From contig NIVC01000630.1 in NCBI GenBank assembly GCA_002269645.1, positions 372,001 to 436,000 on the forward strand: a stretch of DNA of 64,000 nt. Direction: 5' to 3'. This stretch comes from Macrostomum lignano. Lineage: Eukaryota. The translations under genes were made by a program, and so were the position numbers. Positions 1 through 56,214 of the stretch are shown here, piece by piece. Within the stretch, counting starts at the first letter, position 1. Each line of letters starts with the position of its first letter. Under the pieces are notes generated by a model. It saw only the letters and a program-made list of their open reading frames with translations, was not told the DNA's origin and did no database searches.

Positions 1-870
1 TTTCCAACATCAGCCTCTCCCATGGTTCCCTAGTTTCCAACATCAGCCTCTCCCATGGTCCCTTAGTTTCCAACATCAGCCTCTCCCATGGTCCCTTAGT
101 TTCCAACATCAGCCTCTCCCATGGTCCCTTAGTTTCCAACATCAGCCTCTCCCATGGTTCCCTAGTTTCCAACATCAGCCTCTCCCATGGTCCCTTAGTT
201 TCCAACATCAGCCTCTCCCATGGTCCCTTAGTTTCCAACATCAGCCTCTCCCATGGTCCCTTAGTTTCCAACATCAGCCTCTCCCATGGTCCTTTAGTTT
301 CCAACATCAGCCTCTCCCACGGTCCTTTAGTTTCCAACATCAGCCTCTCCCACCGGTCCTTTAGTTTCCAACATCAGCCTCTTCCATGGTCCTTTAGTTT
401 CCAACATCAGCCTCTCCCACGGTCCTTTAGTTTCCAACATCAGCCTCTCCCACGGTCCTTTAGTTTCCAACATCAGCCTCTCCCATGGTCCTTTAGTTTC
501 CAACATCAGCCTCTCCCATGGTCCCTTAGTTTCCAACATCAGCCTCTCCCATAGTCCCTTAGTTTCCAACATCAGCCTCTCCCATGGTCCCTTTGTTTCC
601 AACATCAGTCTCTCCCATAGTCCCTTAGTTTCCAACATCAGCCTCTCCCATGGTCCCTTAGTTTCCAACATCAGCCTCTCCCATAGTCCCTTAGTTTCCA
701 ACATCAGCCTCTCCCATGGTCCCTTAGTTTCCAACATCAGCCTCTCCCATGGTCCCTTTGTTTCCAACATCAACCTCTCCCATGGTCCTTTAGTTTCCAA
801 CATCAGTCTCTCCCATGGTCCCTTAGTTTCCAACATTAGCATCTCCCATGGTTCCCTAGTTTCCAACATC
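1..870. repeat. 33-bp minisatellite (tttccaacatcagcctctcccatggtcccttag), ~26 copies, in the intron of the nuclear receptor gene; continues past the window start
   Basis: Direct 33-bp periodicity. It explains the 11-aa repeat ORF 327..869. Confidence 0.97.
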
Positions 871-1056
871 CGCCTCTCCCTTAGTCTTCCAGCTCAGCCA
901 CCTTATTTACTATCAGTCCCCAAATCTGCCACTCGATTGTCTTTTATTCCTTTTATTCCCTGTAGTCCTAATTATTGCGCAATGTTTTAAAGTCGAATGC
1001 ATTTTATTAGACAGCTATTAGCTACGCTCTTTCATATTTAGAAGCTAAAAACTCAC

Positions 1057-2316
1057 TCTGTCCTCAGCCCTAGCCTGTTGCAAGGCCTCCTGCAGCTGCA
1101 AATCCGACAGCGCCCTGGCCCTATTAAGCGAATCATCGCCTACGGCTACTGTTGTCTCAGTCTGAGCAGCCAGCGGTCTACGCCCCAGTTTGCACGACTC
1201 TCGGCTCATGCCAACAGCCAGGCACTTGCGCAATCGACAGGCTTTACAATCCGACCGATTATTCGGCGTCACGTCGCACTGATTGCCGCCGCGTACGCAG
1301 ACTAGACGCGTCGGAGGCGACAACGAGCCGCCGACGTCCGACACAGACGATTGCTGATTATTAGCCAGAGCTCGTTTGAAAAAATTCCGACAACTTTCGC
1401 AGGCGTGCACGCCGTAGTGCAAATTAACTCGACGATTAGTGCCGCACACCGAGCAGCAAACAGTTGAAGAATTTGTCGCCGAAGAATTCGACGCTGTCGG
1501 AGTCCAAGTAGACGATGTCGGCGATAAGGATGAAGCTGTGGAAGCGGCTGCAACCGACAACAGTTGGCCAACGATGGCATCTTCGTCATCAACATCTTCA
1601 TTGTCATCGTCAAGAACCTCATCGTCGACAATAACATCGTCGTCCATCTGGCCGCCAATGCTGATCGAAGTCGCTGCTGCTGATGTCGGCGATACGACCA
1701 CTGTGGTTGTTGGCGAAGTAGCCGACGGTCTAGCGAGTCGCACGGTGACAGTCCGCCTAGGATTCGATGGCAGGCTTTTAACAACGGCGCCGTTCTTGGC
1801 CGTTGTGGACGACGAAGCGTTGGTTAGCAGAACGTCCTGGCTGTTGTTTTCAACAACTGACCGACGACTGCGGCTGCCACCACTGCGCTGCTGCCTAGCA
1901 ACTCCAAGCACATCGGCAAGAACGTCGTCTTCATGATCATCATCTTTGACGCTATTATCGTCGGTAGAATTATGATTGCCGACAATGATTTCGGCTGGCA
2001 AGACTCCCTGATGATCATCGCCTTCATTGCCGCCGTTATTATCAACAGTATGATGAAGCTGCTGCTGCTGATGCTGGATGATTGACGCACCAGGCGATGA
2101 TTCAACAACAGGAGGAGGCGAGTCAGCCGCAGCATCGCCAAGACGATGCAGCCGGAGCCGCTTGCCAGCAGTAACGAAATTAGCCGAAGCAGATGACTTT
2201 GAAGCTGCTGCAGTTGAGGTAACAGACATCGAGGTTGGCTGAACCAACACTGATGGACGCTTCAATAACTGACTGGCTGTCAATACAGGCTGCTGCTGAT
2301 TGCTACTGCTGCTCAT
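1057..2316 (-). CDS. Nuclear hormone receptor, first coding exon (long low-complexity A/B region plus C4 zinc-finger DBD); the rest of the gene is off-window
   Basis: Two C4 fingers: CSVC...HYGVHACESCRNFFKR...CVRGGNQC...CKACRLRKCLAVGM. The T-box-like GMSRESCKLGRRP follows. Donor AGA|GTGAGT at 1057/1056, phase 0. Confidence 0.92.
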
Positions 2317-2954
2317 AATCTCAATGCTTCGATTCTTTTTTGCTTATAAGACACTTGTGTTTGCCCGTTTCGAGACGGAGAGATTGTTTTGATGGAGCAA
2401 GACCGAGTTCCGAGGGGAAGAGAAGCGCAATTATTATTTACAATTATTTTAGCATAGGCAAACGCCAAGTCTTTATTCGACAAACATTTTCTCCAGTGTG
2501 TTTGTTTCTTTGTACTTGTGTGTGCTTGATTCTGAAATGTAGAAAAATTTGTACCTTAACATTAAGAAAAGTGACTTAGTAATGGAAATAAGAAATTTGT
2601 AAAGTTCTTCTTATAAACTTCAAAAAAACACCTAGACTTTTTTCCATGAGTAAGTTTCTGGCTAAAATGCTCGCTGCAACTACTAACAAGAGTAGTTTTT
2701 TAGTATTTGACTCCGGAAAACAACAAGAAAAGTGGCAACTTCATCAACAAAATCGCCGAGGAACAAATGGGTGCTTTTATATTTTTGTACAAAAGATCTT
2801 GCCAAGCAAATGGTTAACATTCAGTTGAGTTAGCACACGATTAGCCAAACTGCCCTGAATTCAATAACTACTGCGCAGCATTAGACAGAAGAATCAGCTA
2901 AATGCTTTTAAAAACGCTAAATCTTTAAATAGTCGGTTTTTAAAATATAACTTA

Positions 2955-3725
2955 CTACAATAGGTTCAGAGAGGGCAGCAGTGGCAACCTACAGTAGGAT
3001 CGGGGGGGGGGGGCAGCAGCAACCTACAGTAGGATCAGAGGAGGCAGCGGCAATCTACAGTAGGATCAGAGGGGGCAGCGGCAACCTACAGTAGGATCAG
3101 AGGGGGCAGCGGCAACCTACAGTAGGATCGGGGGGGGGGCAGCAGCAACCTACAGTAGGATCAGAGGAGGCAGCGGCAATCTACAGTAGGATCAGAGGAG
3201 GCAGCGGCAACCTACAGTAGGATCAGAGGGGGCAGCGGCAACCTACAGTAGGATCAGAGATGGCAGCGGCAACCTACAATAGGATCAGAGGGGGCAGCGG
3301 CAACCTACAGTAGGATCAGAGGGGGCAGCGGCAACCTACAATAGGATCAGAGGGGGCAGCGGCAACCTACAGTAGGATCAGAGAGGGCAGTGGCAACCTA
3401 CAGTAGGATCAGAGGAGGCAGCGGCAATCTACAGTAGGATCAGAGGAGGCAGCGGCAACCTACAGTAGGATCAGAGGGGGCAGCGGCAACCTACAGTAGG
3501 ATCAGAGGGGGCAGCGGCAACCTACAGTAGGATCAGAGGGGGCAGCGGCAACCTACAGTAGGATCAGAGGGGGCAGCGGCAACCTACAGTAGGATCAGAG
3601 AGGGCAGCGGCAACCTACAGTAGGATCAGAGGGGGCAGCGGCAACCTACAGTAGGATCAGAGAGGGCAGCGGCAACCTACAGTAGGATCAGGGGGGGCAG
3701 CGGCAACCTACAGTAGGATCAGAGG
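2955..3725. repeat. 31-bp minisatellite (ggatcagagggggcagcggcaacctacagta), ~24 copies, directly after the UTP15 stop codon
   Basis: Direct periodicity. Confidence 0.96.
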
Positions 3726-4644: not shown

Positions 4645-5270
4645 GGGATCTGGGAGGCTGGTCCAGCAACTAACACTCTGGGAGGCTGGCACAGAAACTG
4701 AAACTCTGGGAGGCTGGCCCAGCAACTGAGGATCTGGAAGGCTGGCCCAGCAACTGAGGATCTGGAAGGTCAAGCAACTGAGGATCTGGAAGGCTGGCCC
4801 AGCAACTGAGGATCTGGAAGGTCAAGCAACTGAGGATCTGGGAGGTCAAGCAACTGAGGATCTGGGAGGCCCAGCAACCGAGGATCTGGGAGGCCCAGTA
4901 ACTGAGGATCTGGGAGGCCAAGCCACTAAGGATCTGGGAGGTCAAGCAACTGAGGATCTGGGAGGCCCAGCAACCGAGGATCTGGGAGGCCCAGTAACTG
5001 AGGATCTGGGAGGCCCAGCAACCGAAGATCTGGGAGGCCCAGCAACTGAGGATCTGGGAGGCCCAGCAACCGAGGATCTGGGAGGCCAAGCAACTGAGGA
5101 TCTGGGAGGCCCAGCAACTGAGGATCTGGGAGGCCAAGCAACCGAGGATCTGGGAGGCCCAGCAACTGAGGATCTGGGAGGCCAAGCAACTGAGGATCTG
5201 GGAGGCCAAGCAACTGAGGATCTGGGAGGCCAAGCAACTGAGGATCTGGGAGGCCCAGCAACTGAGGATC
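4645..5270. repeat. 24-bp minisatellite filling a UTP15 intron (ggaggcccagcaactgaggatctg)
   Basis: Starts 5 nt after the donor. It explains the ILSCWASQ and LPDPQLLG repeat ORFs. Confidence 0.96.
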
Positions 5271-16320: not shown

Positions 16321-17237
16321 TGTAGAATTGGATATTGAAATATTGAATTGAATAGTTTAAATATTAAATATGAAAATCATGTAACTAATCATTTTTACAC
16401 ATGAAAAAGTGCCAAAACAAACATGGCTACTATATTAGCCATAGGCCCTAGTTATCACTTATCAGTTAATGATTCTCTAAAAAAATTTGGTAGGCTATAT
16501 AAGCAACTTTATGCTTGGCATAATTTTTTAAAAATTATGTTAGTATAGATTTAAAAAACTAAATTTCATTTTGGTATATGCCTACCATGATTTAGTATAT
16601 GAGCCACAGTCCTGTGCTGTCCTGGATGGAATTCTTGCAGAAAAATCACAACGCGTTATACAATTGTGCGAAAAAATGTGATTTTGCATAAAAAAATCCG
16701 GAAAAAATGTGTCATAGAATTTCAGACAAAATTGCTAATTCTTAATATATGCAAAAGTGCGCTTGAGATATTGGATTTTGCAAAAGATAATCCTACTAGC
16801 TAAGATCATGAAGAAAAAAAGAATAAAAAGTAAAAACTTAAAAAAAGGCACAAAAGTAAAAATTCGAAAAAATTCTATAAAAAGTAGAAACTCGTAACAT
16901 TCTCTAACATACTATTTGGACAGAAAAATTCAAATAACTACATTTTCTTAAAATGCATTTTTCGTTATTGTCTTATTGATTACTTTATTTATTATTCATT
17001 GACTATTAATGAAGCTTTTATAGGTTCAGGCAGTAGCTAAGCCATTAAAAAACTTGTTTTTACCATTTTGCGACGTGCTAAGTACCAAAATAAAAAATGC
17101 AACCAATAAAAAATATTTTGCATGCCATAAAAAAATCACATAATTCCGTTTGACTTAAGAAATACAAGAATTCCATCTTGGGCCATAGTCCATAGAAAAA
17201 AGAAATAAGATTATAGTAAGACAAAACTCAATATTAT

Positions 17238-17278
17238 TTGCGACGCGTTTCGGCTAAAACTAGCCATCTTCAGGCACT
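17238..17278 (-). ncRNA. Minimal type I hammerhead ribozyme motif (intact copy)
   Basis: UGC CUGAAGA U GGCUA-GUUU-UAGCC GAAA CGCGU C GCA: conserved core, 5-bp stem II, palindromic ACGCGU stem III, UC cleavage site, 3-bp stem I. Confidence 0.7.
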
Positions 17279-17414
17279 ATCGAACAGAATTTATTTCAAC
17301 CTATTAAATACTGTGTAGACGACAAAATCAGGTATTGAAAAGATATAAAAGGACTAAAGGATCAATGTACAGTATAGCAATGTTCATAATATTTTGTGGA
17401 ATGACAGGACAGAG

Positions 17415-17451
<37 letters not shown>

Positions 17452-17615
17452 GCGTATGCTCTCTCTCTCTCTCTCTTTTCTCTGTCCTGTCATTCCACAA
17501 AATATTATGAACATTGCTATACTGTACATTGATCCTTTAGTCCTTTTATATCTTTTCAATACCTGATTTTGTCGTCTACACAGTATTTAATAGGTTGAAA
17601 TAAATTCTGTTCGAT

Positions 17616-17655
17616 AGTGCCTGAAGATGGCTAGTTTTAGCCGAAACGCATCGCA
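17616..17655 (+). ncRNA. Minimal type I hammerhead ribozyme motif (stem III variant ACGCAU)
   Basis: gtgc CTGAAGA t ggctagttttagcc GAAA cgcatc gca. It differs from the other arm by one G->A change. Confidence 0.55.
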
Positions 17656-17749
17656 AATAATATTGAGTTTTGTCTTACTATTATCTGTTAAGAGTGCTTC
17701 TCTACCGCAAGAAATAAGATTGTTTATTTAAATGATTATAGCAGATAAG

Positions 17750-19200
17750 TTTTATTCCTAGCCTAGCACCTAGCCTGATAGTAGAATAATTTGTGCTATG
17801 GACTAGTTTCTGTGCATTGCTAGTGTTAATAGCAAATGTACCTTGGTTTAACAAGTACATTTCAACATGGATATATAGTCCCTTGTTGTTTAGCTAGGCA
17901 ACCAACTTTTATATATTGGTCAAACATTTGCTAGAATATGCATTGAATTGATTGTGTCAACCTTTAGAATAATTGTTTATCTTGATAGCTAGCTTATAGA
18001 CAAACATTTTCAATAGTCTATACCAAGCTTGTGAACCAGAAAGACTAAATATAGTTGAATATTGCACAATTCCATTAGGCAATTCTCTGTAGTTAGCATA
18101 TTGCTCTATAAGCTATAGAAGATATTGGCCATCATATCTGCTAGAAGAAATGGTATCATTATCAGCTTACATTAGAAGAAATTAGTGCTATTATCACTAT
18201 TATATCACTACTACATTGCATTTTTTGAAGTAGAAATTGTAGTTTTTTCTACACAACAAGTAGGCCTTATCTAAAAACTCTAACTAGATAGCCATCTAAA
18301 TGGCTTTCTCAAATTTTGCCATGCAGCTAGATAGGTTGACAACTAATTCTAGTTTTTTTATTATTTATAGGATGTATTTATAATCCTTGGTTTTATGCTA
18401 CAATATGAAAGTGAAAAGCAGTGGCACCTGTTTAGTGTTTTAATGTTTTCTTTGGGGCTGCCAATGAATGTCTAAATTGCTAACAGCTAATAAATAATGC
18501 TTAAATTCATAAAAGTTGAAGGTACTATTGATATATAGGCAGCATGCCTGCTATTATTGATATACTAGAAGAAGCTTTCTGGCAGATAGTGATGCTCAAG
18601 TTCTTAGTCAAGGTTTTCTAGATTGCATGGTTAGTCTGCTTCCTAGGTATGGCTTACTGCATAGACTAAGTTGCCAAAATTAGATACATTTGGCACATCT
18701 TGAAACTATGATAGCACTTATAACATCTTGGTCCTAATCCTGACAATCTGGGATGCCAACTCAAAGGTATTCTTGTGTGCTTGATTGAGAACTTTTATTA
18801 AATTTTAAAAAGTTAAAACTTTAAAACTTTTATTAAATTATTGCAATAAACAAGGCTAACTTTGTCAATTTTTGTTAAAAATTAAAGATATCATTCATAT
18901 GATCTCTGGTATATAGTAACTCCCAATCTTGTTGGGATTAAACAGTTTGTGTAGTACTGTATAAGCTTCCTTGCCAATTGTTGTCATCTTAGTCATCTTA
19001 GCTTCATCCTTTATCTCTTTGCAGATGAAGTAATGTTGAAGTCTCTCTAGATATATGTCAATATCAATGTTCACAAAGATAATTATGTCTCCTAATGTAG
19101 AAATTGTTGCCATTATATATGTAGTAATTTGGAAGGCAAAGATTGGCTTGCAATGAGATACCCTAAAAAGAGGTTGCCACATAGTGGGAGGCATATATAT
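17750..19200 (-). mobile_element. Heavily decayed Ty3/gypsy LTR-retrotransposon relic (gag N-terminus, eroded zinc knuckles)
   Basis: MATISTLGD...DIDIYLERLQHYFICKEIKDE...TTIGKEAYTVLHKL matches the gypsy gag N-terminal motif. Downstream there are RCYKC and AKC..FGNL remnants with stops. Confidence 0.65.
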
Positions 19201-19258
19201 TTAGTAAATTAGTTGGTAAGTATGCCCCTAAGCTTTGTATTTAGAGAGAAGCAAGAAA

Positions 19259-19262
<4 letters not shown>

Positions 19263-19320
<58 letters not shown>
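19263..19320. repeat. (GA)n microsatellite
   Basis: Direct. Confidence 0.98.
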
Positions 19321-19323
<3 letters not shown>

Positions 19324-20157
19324 GCAACTAGACAGACATGCAGTGAGTTAGACAAGGGGAGTGTGCACATAGAAAATAGTCAAAGTGCATATCATGTAGC
19401 ATAAACACCATAGAATCAGATCTCAATTCTGAAATCTGTGGATCCTAGCAAGCATTTGTATCTTTGATCTTTGTAATTGTAATACCACTCCTATAATCTA
19501 AAATATTTTAGGATCCTAGCAAAAATTTGGAATCTTACGAGATGTAAATCATGAAAAATTGGTCTTATCTAACCTCTACTATATGTGCATAAAAGTTTTA
19601 TTCTGTTTTGCAACAATTATTTAGTGATCATTAAAATATTATAGGTAGACAATTTATATAATATACGCATTTATATGCATTCATATAAATCTACTTTTTA
19701 CATACATTTGTTTTTAGAATCTTGCTAAGGGAATTCATAGTTTTAAAACATAATTTAAAAGTTTATTTTTTAAATTGTGTGATATATAAGATATATTTAG
19801 TCATCAAATTGCATAGCTATAGTCTAAATTATGGAAAATCATGTACAAGTGTATGTCAGATAGGACTTTAAAACTTTTTCCATACTAAATTAAGATTGTT
19901 TATTTAAATGATTATAGCAGATAAGACAGTTGTATAGAAATCTATCTATATCTAGTTAAACAAATCGTACCACTATTAAGATTTTGTTGTTTTTTTGTAA
20001 TTCACAGTCATGTCAAGTAGAGGTTTTGGCAGCTCTACTAATTACTAGGAATTATTATGCTTATTATGCCAATTATGCTCCAGCGGGCAGCAGGCTGCTT
20101 CAATCACAAACTGCTGCTGTCGCCTTGGCCAGTGGGCTGTCATTCCGGCCAGTCAGC

Positions 20158-21134
20158 ATGCACAATGATGAATCGGATTGTCAATCAATGATTGAACAGT
20201 CAGCTGCTATTGTCTGTCTGACAGCAATCGCTGAATCTCATCCATTTTCGGACCGTTTTGTCCCGGTGCCTAGGCTGCCAGCCTCCTCGACGGCTTCATC
20301 ATCAACTTCAGCTGCCGTTGTTCGAATTGGCCGGGCTAGCGGCCAGCTCAGGCCAGCCAAGGATAATGCCCTGTTCGATTGCAAAGTGCTGAGCCGTTGC
20401 CATGCAGTGCTGGCTTACACTACAGATGGAACTTTCCTGCTGACGGACACTAGAAGCAGCAATGGCACATTTGTGAATGGCATCAGGTTAGATCGGAACC
20501 GTCCTACTCAGATACTCACAGGCGATGCAGTTCAATTCGGCGTACCTGTGAAATGCCGCGACAAACCTGTATTTGACTGTATCAGAGCTCGACTGGAGCT
20601 TCGACATCCCGATGGTGAAACTGCGCCTAGTAGAAGTCGAACCAGAGTCCGACAACGGCAAAGCAGCTCTGCCGATGTTGACGACACAGATGACGCAGTC
20701 GATGATAGTGGAGTAGGCAGGACTGAACTGTTGGCCCGCTGTCTAGAGCGGGCAATGCAGAGGGAACGGCTGTTAGATTTGAAATTGGCCTGTCTAAGGC
20801 GTAGGCAGCAACAGCAGGGTCAGGAGCTGTGCCCATCTGTTTACCATGAGCCGGCGCTAAGATTGTCCTGGCGTCGATTGTCGGCCGATGGTCAAGCGGT
20901 TGCCAGGCTGAAATCGCTTGCCACCGACGCTCGAGAAGCTGGCATTGTCGGCGACGTTGGAGACGGCTGTCTGGGTGGCGTTGATTTAGCTGAGATTTCC
21001 AACGCCGCGGCGGAGGCCTGGCTGGCCGAGCTAGACAGGGGCCTGGCCGAACGGGAGGCTATCATTGGCCGGCTGACCGATTTAGAGGCTCAATTGGAGC
21101 TGGGCGGGCGGGAGTGCCAGCATCTGTTAGCCAG
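20158..21134 (+). CDS. SLMAP: SLMAP-like protein, exon 1 (FHA domain plus start of coiled coil)
   Basis: SHPF.DR...IGR...RPAKDNALFDCKVLSRCHA...DTRSSNGTFVN...GDAVQFGV and LERAMQRERLLDLKL are SLMAP hallmarks. Donor AG|GTAAGT, phase 2. The start Met choice (20158 vs 20188) is uncertain. Confidence 0.88.
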
Positions 21135-21169
21135 GTAAGTTCTCTGGGCCTAAATTCCGTCATTTAATT

Positions 21170-27179: not shown

Positions 27180-27749
27180 ATGTTCAAACTGAAGCAACAG
27201 CAAGCCGCTGCAGCTGCTGAATCAGCTGGTGGCGGCGGCGGCGGCGGCGGCGGTCGCACCAGAACGATTTCTACATCTCGCGATCGACTACTACTAAAAG
27301 AGATGTCCGAACTGCAAGAAGTGCTCACTCAACAGCGTACAACTCTTCATTTGCCTAACCCTAGTGTACTATCGGAGTTTGTACTCACAATATCGCCTGC
27401 CGAGGGCCTGTGGGCTGGCGGGCATTTCAAATTCATAGTCCGAGTGCCCGAGGCTTATAATCTGGCCCCGCCTGAGGTCACCTGTCAGACCCGGGTTTGG
27501 CATCCCAATGTGAGCGAACAAGGCGAAGTCTGCCTGTCTCTATTGCGCCTGAACTCCATTGATGGTTTCGGCTGGTATCCGACTAGAACGCTAAAAGATG
27601 TCGTACTTGGCTTGGAATCTTTGTTCACCGATCTGTGTGATTTTCACGACGCATTGAACGCCGAAGCAGCCGATCAGTATAGGTGCAATCCGCAGGCGTT
27701 CAAGCTTAAAGTTAGCGAATATATTCGTCGCTATGCTTGTAGGAAGTAA
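27180..27749 (+). CDS. UBE2F: NEDD8-conjugating enzyme UBE2F (E2), single exon, 189 aa
   Basis: RDRLLLKEMSEL...WHPNVSEQGEVCLSLLR.NSIDG.GW.PTRTLKDVV.GL.SLFTDL...YIRRYA is the UBE2F-specific pattern, with the catalytic Cys present. Confidence 0.95.
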   Translation: MFKLKQQQAAAAAESAGGGGGGGGGRTRTISTSRDRLLLKEMSELQEVLTQQRTTLHLPNPSVLSEFVLTISPAEGLWAGGHFKFIVRVPEAYNLAPPEVTCQTRVWHPNVSEQGEVCLSLLRLNSIDGFGWYPTRTLKDVVLGLESLFTDLCDFHDALNAEAADQYRCNPQAFKLKVSEYIRRYACRK

Positions 27750-55792: not shown

Positions 55793-56130
55793 ATGGCCAG
55801 CAAGTGCAAACGCCAAGAGCCTCTCGCATTGCTGTTGTCTGCATTCTGTTCTGCGAATTATGCGAACGGCTCACTTATTATTCGATCATAGCTAATCTGC
55901 TCATTTTCCTACAAAATCATTTGGGCTTCGATTCGAACTCGGCACTAACTGGGACTCTGGTATTCTCGGGCACAGTGTACTTTACTCCGATGTTTGGAGG
56001 CTGGCTGGCCGACTCTGTGATCGGTCGGTACAACACTTTGTACTTGTCTGGCCTCATTTATGCCGTTGGCTGCGCACTGCTGCCTACTGTAGCCTTTGAC
56101 TATGAGCAGCTCGGGGTGCAGCTTGATCAG
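55793..56130 (+). CDS. SLC15A4: SLC15A4-like transporter, exon 2
   Basis: ExxER motif CELCERLTYY and FGGWLADSVIGRYNT. Donor CAG|GTATTG. Confidence 0.92.
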
Positions 56131-56214
56131 GTATTGATCCCCGATTTCAATGGGCGGGGGACGGGATAGTTTAATATCGGTGAGACAGAGATGTTTGCAT
56201 TGGAATTAAGCTTT

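What the first reader, a model, noticed from the sequence alone, without database searches (positions are those of the whole stretch)
17200..17721. Perfect ~470-bp palindrome carrying two outward-facing hammerhead ribozymes (non-autonomous Penelope-type unit)
Seen: two ~235-bp arms are almost exact reverse complements, joined through (GA)n / 12-nt loop / (CT)n. Each arm has CUGAAGA-U-stem II-GAAA-CGCGUC. The right arm extends 27 nt further, and the whole unit is flanked by a 13-bp direct repeat. There is no ORF. Established: Penelope-like elements carry minimal hammerheads with a palindromic stem III that works as a dimer, and they often insert with inverted pLTR copies. Inference: a very young insertion of a retrozyme-like or pLTR-only mobile RNA. 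A transcript from either strand would fold into a ~235-bp dsRNA hairpin containing one ribozyme, giving a potential self-processing siRNA source about 2.5 kb upstream of SLMAP. The plus-strand core has ACGCAU in place of ACGCGU and may be impaired.
Basis: partly seen in the sequence, partly recalled or inferred. Interest (0 to 1): 0.8.

Follow-up and report, generated by a model that had tools for sequence, protein, structure and literature searches.

The report
Dead inverted Penelope-element end pair
This is a young, ORF-less insertion in the flatworm Macrostomum lignano, made of two head-to-head copies of the 3' end of a Penelope-like retrotransposon, each with that element's small hammerhead ribozyme motif; it is a clean example of a known insertion form, not a new kind of element.

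Summary
The arms 17208-17435 and 17459-17686 match at 226 of 228 positions. They are joined by (AG)14.5, a 12-nt centre and (CT)9. Only the right arm has an extra 27 nt, and an exact 13-bp repeat flanks the whole unit. Each arm carries a Penelope-type minimal hammerhead. The minus-strand copy is intact. The plus-strand copy has a CpG-to-CpA change that breaks the helix III palindrome.

The window is Macrostomum lignano. A second contig of the same assembly is a precise empty site with one copy of the 13-mer, so this is a real, recent transposition and not an assembly artefact.

I found the same architecture many times in unrelated metagenome contigs: outward-facing hammerheads, a short spacer, a tail on one side and a target-site duplication. 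One such locus has the hammerhead next to a telomerase-like reverse transcriptase ORF. The published descriptions of Penelope-like elements (PLEs) match: an inverted 5'-truncated copy, an optional tail, and cutting and extension of both target strands.

The best reading is an abortive PLE insertion primed from both target strands. The retrozyme-like and self-processing siRNA ideas are not supported: there is no tandem copy, and the ribozyme would be buried in a -399 kcal/mol hairpin.

The parts
17200..17212 (.). Left copy of the 13-bp target-site duplication AAGAAATAAGATT. Its last bases, AGAT at 17208-17211, are a microhomology with the element sequence.
   Evidence: family D6. The empty-site contig L122 has a single copy at 653-665.
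17213..17446 (-). Left arm: a 5'-truncated copy of the 3' end of a PLE. The sense strand is the minus strand. The arm has no tail and ends towards the centre in (AG)14.5 at 17418-17446.
17242..17273 (-). Intact PLE-type minimal hammerhead: CUGAAGA, a bulged U, a 5-bp helix II with a GUUU loop, GAAA, and the palindromic ACGCGU followed by C17. The cut is predicted between 17242 and 17241.
17447..17458. 12-nt unique centre ATGAGGCGTATG between the two arms. Its origin is unresolved.
17459..17681 (+). Right arm: a 5'-truncated copy of the same PLE 3' end. The sense strand is the plus strand. The arm starts with (CT)9 at 17459-17476.
17621..17652 (+). Hammerhead copy with G16.2 changed to A at 17650, a CpG-to-CpA change. 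The helix III palindrome is broken. The nominal cut is after C17652.
17682..17708 (+). One-sided PLE 'tail' of 27 nt, of which 22 nt lie beyond the microhomology TATCT. It is present only on the right arm.
   Evidence: The PLE tail is described. The same one-sided 30-32-nt tails occur in L064 and L039.
17709..17721 (.). Right copy of the 13-bp target-site duplication.

Best explanation
The unit is the dead-on-arrival product of one retrotransposition event of a Penelope-like element (PLE) in Macrostomum lignano.

Inferred mechanism:
1. The PLE endonuclease cut both strands of an AT-rich target 13 bp apart. The top-strand nick falls after ...GATT.
2. Both 3'-OH ends primed reverse transcription on the 3'-terminal part of PLE RNA. 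One started at the distal start site and gave the right arm with its 27-nt tail. The other started about 27 nt further in, helped by a 4-nt AGAT microhomology, and gave the left arm.
3. Both cDNAs stopped about 230 nt in, at a (CU)n tract, and were joined head to head.
4. Fill-in of the staggered cut produced the 13-bp duplication.

Each arm therefore carries the hammerhead that PLEs have in the pseudo-LTRs (pLTRs, the repeats that flank their ORF), with the sense strand running from the centre outwards.

What is shown: the anatomy; the insertion, by its empty site; the PLE type of the ribozyme motif; and the recurrence of the same architecture elsewhere. What is inferred: priming from both strands, the two start sites, and the head-to-head joining.

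The unit has no ORF and no second sense ribozyme. It most likely has no function today. It is a neutral insertion that is absent from the two sister contigs examined.
For: - Empty site. Window 16549-17212 equals L122 1-665 at 99.7% identity, and window 17709-20600 equals L122 653-3545 at 98.6%. The two alignments overlap in one AAGAAATAAGATT. The filled haplotype, L123, is 100% identical to the window.
- Species. A neighbouring ORF is 99% identical to a M. lignano protein.
- Motif. [quoted passage not shown]
- Same motif class elsewhere. At least 120 metagenome contigs carry it. Helices I and II covary: 81.8% of cells are paired against at most 40.6% in the slid controls, and there are 50 double changes against 26.8 +/- 3.8 in shuffles.
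- Orientation. Adjacent hammerhead pairs closer than 1 kb are outward-facing 20 times and inward-facing 4 times. Many are palindromes with spacers of 2-23 nt.
- Matching details. L064 and L039 have target-site duplications of 12 and 9 nt plus a one-sided tail of 30-32 nt, and L118 has a flanking direct repeat of about 20 nt.
- PLE link. In L007 a hammerhead is followed by an ORF whose best solved-structure match is telomerase reverse transcriptase, E = 3e-5.
- Literature. An inverted 5'-truncated copy and an optional 30-40-bp tail at one end are PLE hallmarks. A purified PLE protein cuts and extends both target strands, prefers AT-rich 5'-ATT-3' sites, and the tail equals the sequence between two reverse-transcription start sites. 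Pairs of minimal hammerheads 100-700 bp apart on opposite strands were already reported in the flatworm Schistosoma mansoni.
Against: - No parent PLE with this 3' end could be retrieved from M. lignano. The link to PLEs therefore rests on the motif type and the architecture, not on homology to an autonomous element.
- There is no RT or GIY-YIG remnant in the window.
- Rfam hammerhead models do not score the motif even at E <= 10.
- The tail, at 22-27 nt, is shorter than the published 30-40 bp.
- Two independent cDNAs should not stop at almost the same point. Simple two-strand priming does not explain the near-symmetry seen here and in the comparators.
- The published in vitro work found no homology between the primer and the RNA, whereas a 4-nt microhomology is seen here.
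Confidence: 0.8

Rival explanations
1. The unit is a non-autonomous mobile element: a short pLTR-only or retrozyme-like RNA with a defined 5' end near the (CU)n tract. A PLE enzyme would mobilise it in trans, and it would insert as a palindrome every time.
For: Both arms end at nearly the same point, as expected if the template RNA had a fixed 5' end. There is no ORF. Animal retrozymes are reported to derive from PLE pLTRs.
Against: There is no tandem arrangement, which defines retrozymes. There is no second copy in 64 kb plus 41 kb of sister contigs. In a homologous metagenome family the arms stop at different points in different loci, so symmetry comes from the insertion process and not from a fixed RNA end.
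Confidence: 0.1
2. The unit is a hairpin-RNA gene. Read-through transcription would give a 228-bp dsRNA that is diced into siRNAs, possibly against the parent PLE, with the ribozyme trimming the precursor.
For: The predicted hairpin is extremely stable: -399 kcal/mol, z = -51. It lies about 2.4 kb upstream of a gene.
Against: There is no evidence of transcription. The unit is present in only one of three sister contigs. The Rfam miRNA matches are all far below the gathering scores and are generic hairpin matches. The hammerhead is buried in the hairpin and has no partner for helix III.
Confidence: 0.05
3. The unit is a foldback or MITE-type DNA transposon with 228-bp terminal inverted repeats.
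For: It has long inverted repeats, a flanking direct repeat and no ORF.
Against: The ends are asymmetric, with 27 extra nt on one side only. From my own knowledge, a 13-bp duplication is longer than those of the known cut-and-paste superfamilies. The arms carry a sense-oriented PLE hammerhead at a PLE-typical distance from the outer end. No other copy was found.
Confidence: 0.03
4. The palindrome is an assembly or library fold-back artefact.
For: Palindromes are a known long-read artefact, and PLE insertions are said to trouble assemblies.
Against: The exact 13-bp duplication matches a single-copy empty site. There is a one-sided tail, unequal (AG)n and (CT)n runs, and a CpG-to-CpA difference between the arms. 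The same architecture appears in independent metagenome assemblies.
Confidence: 0.02

Closest known systems
Inverted 5'-truncated Penelope-like element insertions with a one-sided 'tail' (Craig et al. 2021, PMC8557442; PAc in vitro study, PMC11167929)
   Same: Head-to-head inverted copies whose 3' ends face outwards. An optional extension at one end only. An AT-rich target. A hammerhead near the 3' end. Strong 5' truncation.
   Different: Here both copies are truncated to about 230-250 nt, so no ORF or full pLTR remains. The tail is 22-27 nt, not 30-40 nt. A 4-nt microhomology is visible at the tail-less junction. The parent element was not found.
PLE minimal hammerhead ribozymes, small palindromic helix III variant (Cervera and de la Pena 2014, PMC4209133)
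   Same: The CUGANGA/GAAA core, a bulged nucleotide after A9, the G10.1-C11.1 pair, a palindromic ACGCGU, and a very short helix I. Pairs 100-700 bp apart on opposite strands were reported in the flatworm S. mansoni.
   Different: Helix II is 5 bp, at the short end of the reported 6-8 bp. Helix I is only 3 bp. One copy has lost the palindrome. Activity is untested.
Animal non-LTR retrozymes (PMC7229834; bioRxiv 10.64898/2026.07.22.740005)
   Same: Short, ORF-less, AT-rich, hammerhead-bearing and related to PLE pLTRs.
   Different: Retrozymes are head-to-tail tandem repeats with canonical type I hammerheads that release circular RNAs. This unit is an inverted pair with minimal hammerheads and cannot release a unit-length RNA.
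LINE-1 twin-priming inversions (Ostertag and Kazazian 2001; from my own knowledge)
   Same: Both target 3'-OH ends prime cDNA synthesis, which gives inverted segments flanked by one target-site duplication.
   Different: In L1 the two segments are different parts of the RNA. Here both arms copy the same part, which gives a near-perfect palindrome.

Membership tests
PLE-type minimal hammerhead ribozyme | Catalytic boxes CUGANGA and GAAA, with a UH cleavage site | tested here: met
   Both copies have them. There were 0 hits in 300 simulated windows.
PLE-type minimal hammerhead ribozyme | Unpaired nucleotide between A9 and G10.1, and a G10.1-C11.1 pair | tested here: met
   A bulged U is followed by GGCUA/UAGCC. 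These features are listed.
PLE-type minimal hammerhead ribozyme | Palindromic positions 15.2-16.2 and loop 3, allowing a dimeric helix III | tested here: met
   The minus-strand copy has ACGCGU, with a self-duplex energy of -8.9 kcal/mol. The plus-strand copy has ACGCAU and fails, at -2.7 kcal/mol.
PLE-type minimal hammerhead ribozyme | Self-cleavage as a dimer or with the PLE protein | not testable with these tools
   This needs in vitro transcription of tandem constructs.
Canonical type I hammerhead (Rfam hammerhead models) | A score against the curated covariance models | tested here: not met
   No hammerhead match at the gathering score or at E <= 10. This is as expected for motifs that lack a helix III hairpin and loop 1.
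Penelope-like element (full element) | An ORF with a telomerase-like RT and a GIY-YIG endonuclease | tested here: not met
   There is no such ORF or remnant in the window. The unit is a truncated derivative, not an element.
Penelope-like element (insertion signature) | An inverted 5'-truncated copy, an optional tail at one end, and a target-site duplication | tested here: met
   against the descriptions.
Penelope-like element (insertion signature) | Sequence homology of the arms to an autonomous PLE of the same genome | not testable with these tools
   The M. lignano genome cannot be searched by DNA here. The peptide search found nothing.
Non-LTR retrozyme | Head-to-tail tandem repeats, one hammerhead per unit | tested here: not met
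   The copies are inverted, and no tandem array exists apart from the (AG)n run.
Foldback or MITE DNA transposon | Symmetric terminal inverted repeats that abut the duplication | tested here: not met
   There is a 27-nt asymmetry at the right end.
miRNA or hairpin-RNA gene | A match to a curated family, or evidence of expression | tested here: not met
   All miRNA matches score 17-54 bits against gathering scores of 44-107 bits. Expression cannot be tested here.

The most novel reading that the evidence does not exclude
Palindromic PLE-end insertions such as this one may not be mere debris. A PLE reverse transcriptase dimer would make them regularly from a short pLTR RNA. Once transcribed, they would act as hairpin precursors of small RNAs that silence the parent PLE through its pLTR, hammerhead and start-of-ORF region. 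The near-identical stopping point of the two arms would then reflect a defined template, not chance.
Probability: 0.1. Interest if true: 0.6.

Novelty: new member of a known kind. Interest (0 to 1): 0.25.

Why it matters
This is a textbook-quality, datable example of how Penelope-like elements insert. One assembly holds both the filled site and the exact empty site. The tail is on one side only, and a microhomology is visible at the other junction.

Together with the metagenome comparators, it shows that near-symmetric palindromes are a regular outcome of PLE integration. That fits the recent in vitro finding that the enzyme cuts and extends both target strands, and it raises a specific mechanistic question: why do both cDNAs stop at the same place?

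It also shows that PLEs have been active recently in M. lignano, a regeneration model. For gene function it is probably irrelevant.

Tried and rejected
- Rfam. I scanned the whole window at gathering score, then 17100-17800 and 17595-17685 at E <= 10. There was no hammerhead hit, only sub-threshold generic hairpin matches to miRNA families.
- Start-codon idea. By analogy with the PAc element, I considered that the AUG formed by A9-U-G10.1 might start the PLE ORF, since the cut site lies 26 nt downstream as in PAc. In the metagenome copies the same AUG opens only 2-40 codons. The AUG follows automatically from a bulged U, so I dropped the idea.
- SLMAP-like ORF. I searched with it to find the species or an empty site. 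It gave only 38-44% matches. The UBE2F-like ORF later succeeded.
- Pfam on ORFs next to metagenome hammerheads. This gave only weak RVT_1 hits. The comparison with solved structures gave the telomerase RT link.
- Other copies. I looked for another arm copy or an RT remnant in the window and in the sister contigs, and found none.
- Paralogous empty site. A 38-nt match at 19888-19925 was considered, but it extends only weakly past the duplication. The true empty site in L122 superseded it.
- Papers. The Lunse et al. and Pyatkov et al. papers were not held.

Full report
**1. What is in the sequence**

The region holds two arms, 17208-17435 and 17459-17686. They are 228 nt long and 99% complementary, with 226 of 228 positions matching.
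- One mismatch, 17212/17682, lies at the left junction.
- The other, 17244/17650, turns the minus-strand ACGCGUC into ACGCAUC on the plus strand. It is a CpG-to-CpA change.
- The centre is not symmetric. It reads (AG)14.5 at 17418-17446, then ATGAGGCGTATG, then (CT)9.
- An exact 13-mer, AAGAAATAAGATT, sits at 17200-17212 and 17709-17721.
- The right arm runs 27 nt further (17682-17708) before it meets the 13-mer.
- At the left junction, the last bases of the 13-mer (AGAT) match the element sequence TATCT that begins this extension.
- As RNA, the whole unit folds into one hairpin of -399 kcal/mol, z = -51.
- No ORF of 90 aa or more overlaps it, and no other copy of the arm exists in the window.

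**2. The ribozyme motif**

Each arm carries CUGAAGA, a U, a 5-bp helix II (GGCUA/UAGCC) with a GUUU loop, GAAA, and then CGCGUC or CGCAUC.
- A generic minimal-hammerhead descriptor that I wrote without reference to this sequence finds the minus-strand copy and nothing else in the 64 kb. It finds nothing in 300 simulated windows.
- The plus-strand copy fails that descriptor only because its helix III palindrome is broken. An even looser core scan finds just these two sites.
- Rfam's hammerhead models do not score either copy, even at E <= 10 on a 91-nt stretch. That fits the literature. Penelope-like elements (PLEs) carry 'minimal' hammerheads without a stable helix III. These were found with dedicated descriptors and are thought to act as dimers through a palindromic helix III.
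[quoted passage not shown] All four are present in the minus-strand copy. Helix I here is only 3 bp (UGC/GCA).
- The ACGCGU self-duplex is worth -8.9 kcal/mol and ACGCAU only -2.7 kcal/mol.

**3. Relatives elsewhere**

I scanned the metagenome contigs for CTGANGATGG, then 6-14 nt, then CCGAAACGCRTC. At least 120 contigs matched.
- About eleven are bacterial coding sequences that match by chance and have no stem.
- The rest have complementary helix II sequences. In 71 distinct 50-nt sites, helices I and II covary. 81.8% of cells are paired, against at most 40.6% when partners are slid. There are 50 double changes, against 26.8 +/- 3.8 in shuffles.
- Adjacent hammerheads closer than 1 kb are outward-facing, as in the window, 20 times and inward-facing 4 times. 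This falls to about 17 against 4 once two loci that were sampled twice are removed.
- Many of these pairs are palindromes with arms of 113-290 nt and spacers of 2-23 nt.
- L064 has a 12-nt flanking repeat and a 32-nt extension on one side only. L039 has a 9-nt repeat and a 30-nt extension. L118 has a flanking direct repeat of about 20 nt.
- Four loci of one homologous family (L064, L118, L073, L071) have arms that start at different distances from the hammerhead. Each palindrome was therefore made at its own insertion.
- In L007 a hammerhead is followed, on the same strand, by an ORF whose best match among solved structures is telomerase reverse transcriptase, E = 3e-5. This is as expected for a PLE reverse transcriptase. 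Pfam gave only weak RVT_1 matches to ORFs of L068 and L064 and none to the L007 ORFs.

**4. Species and the empty site**

The SLMAP-like ORF had only distant relatives. The UBE2F-like ORF at 27180-27746 is 99% identical to a Macrostomum lignano protein. Its cluster has three members on three contigs of assembly GCA_002269645.1.
- L123 (NIVC01000630.1) is 100% identical to window 17174-20600 and contains the palindrome.
- L122 (NIVC01001387.1) matches window 16549-17212 at 99.7% over its positions 1-665, and window 17709-20600 at 98.6% over its positions 653-3545. The two alignments overlap in exactly one AAGAAATAAGATT. This is a precise empty site.
- The palindrome plus one copy of the 13-mer is therefore an insertion. 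It arose after these sister copies diverged by about 1%.
- This rules out a fold-back assembly artefact for practical purposes and confirms 'young'.
- L121 lacks a 1950-bp segment that includes the site, so it is uninformative for this test.

**5. How it most likely arose**

Published work describes the following for PLEs:
- heavy 5' truncation;
- an inverted 5'-truncated copy next to the element;
- a 30-40-bp 'tail' present at one end only.

In vitro, a purified PLE protein cuts and extends both strands of an AT-rich target, preferentially at 5'-ATT-3'. It starts reverse transcription at two internal sites, and the interval between those sites equals the tail.

The window fits this closely.
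- The sense strand of each arm runs from the centre outwards, so each outer end is a cDNA start next to a target 3'-OH.
- The top-strand nick implied by the duplication falls after GATT.
- One arm starts 27 nt further out than the other.

I infer priming from both target strands at a 13-bp staggered cut, abortive synthesis of about 230 nt on each side, and head-to-head joining. I cannot explain why both arms stop at nearly the same point, here at a (CU)n tract. The comparators show the same near-symmetry, so it seems to be a property of the process. It could be a template switch between the two cDNAs, or the action of an RT dimer.

**6. What it does now**

Probably nothing. It has no ORF and no tandem partner, and it is absent from the two sister contigs examined. 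The siRNA idea cannot be excluded without expression data. The 'self-processing' part is unlikely for two reasons.
- In either transcript the sense hammerhead lies in the 3' arm, which is made after its perfect complement, so the hairpin sequesters it.
- PLE minimal hammerheads need a second sense copy.

**7. Comparison and novelty**

The unit works like, and carries the insertion signature of, a PLE insertion. It is not a full PLE, because it has no RT or endonuclease ORF. It is not a retrozyme either, because it is not tandem and its hammerhead is not canonical. Pairs of minimal hammerheads on opposite strands 100-700 bp apart were already noted in another flatworm. I found no paper on PLEs of M. 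lignano. I therefore rate it as a new member of a known kind, of modest interest, and useful mainly as a clean mechanistic specimen.

Noticed in passing
window 16964-18913, against L121 676|677: The 1950-bp segment that contains the palindrome is missing from the sister contig NIVC01000374.1. No target-site duplication is visible at the junction. It is an indel of unknown origin.
   Followed up: partly
L121 1293-2255 (absent at window 19504|19505 and in L122): A 963-bp element with terminal inverted repeats of about 35 bp (ACGAGGGGTGTCCAAAAAGTAGTGATACTTTTAAC...), flanked by TA. It looks like a Tc1/mariner-type MITE that is present in one sister contig only.
   Followed up: partly
window 17712-17749 and 19888-19925: A 38-nt near-duplicate (97%) that spans the right target-site copy and its flank. 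A second copy lies just upstream of the SLMAP-like gene. Its origin is unknown.
   Followed up: partly
window 327-869, 4926-5261, 10.3-12 kb, 26.0-26.5 kb, 29.0-30.3 kb, 35.2-36.4 kb, 40.4-45 kb, 49.5-50.4 kb, 56.2-63.3 kb: The window has a very high load of minisatellites and microsatellites. About 23% of test placements fell inside tandem-repeat blocks, and many spurious long ORFs are made of repeats.
   Followed up: no
L072, L089, L070, L119, L055, L084, L115, L111, L066, L091: These bacterial contigs match the hammerhead sequence pattern by chance, inside a conserved coding stretch (peptide LKMACGENPKRVY), and have no helix II. This is a caution for hammerhead searches that use a sequence pattern alone.
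   Followed up: partly
L039/L098, L060, L071, L073, L118, L064, L083: These near-symmetric palindromic hammerhead pairs have spacers of 2-23 nt and arm lengths of 113-290 nt. The equal truncation of both arms is not explained by simple priming from both strands.
   Followed up: partly
window 1045-2316 (-), 19984-21138 (+), 27180-27749 (+), 55804-56169 (+): Neighbouring genes, read from the ORF translations: a nuclear-receptor zinc-finger ORF, an FHA/SLMAP-like gene, an intronless UBE2F-like gene and a peptide-transporter-like exon. The coding parts are GC-rich and set in AT-rich, repeat-rich spacers.
   Followed up: partly
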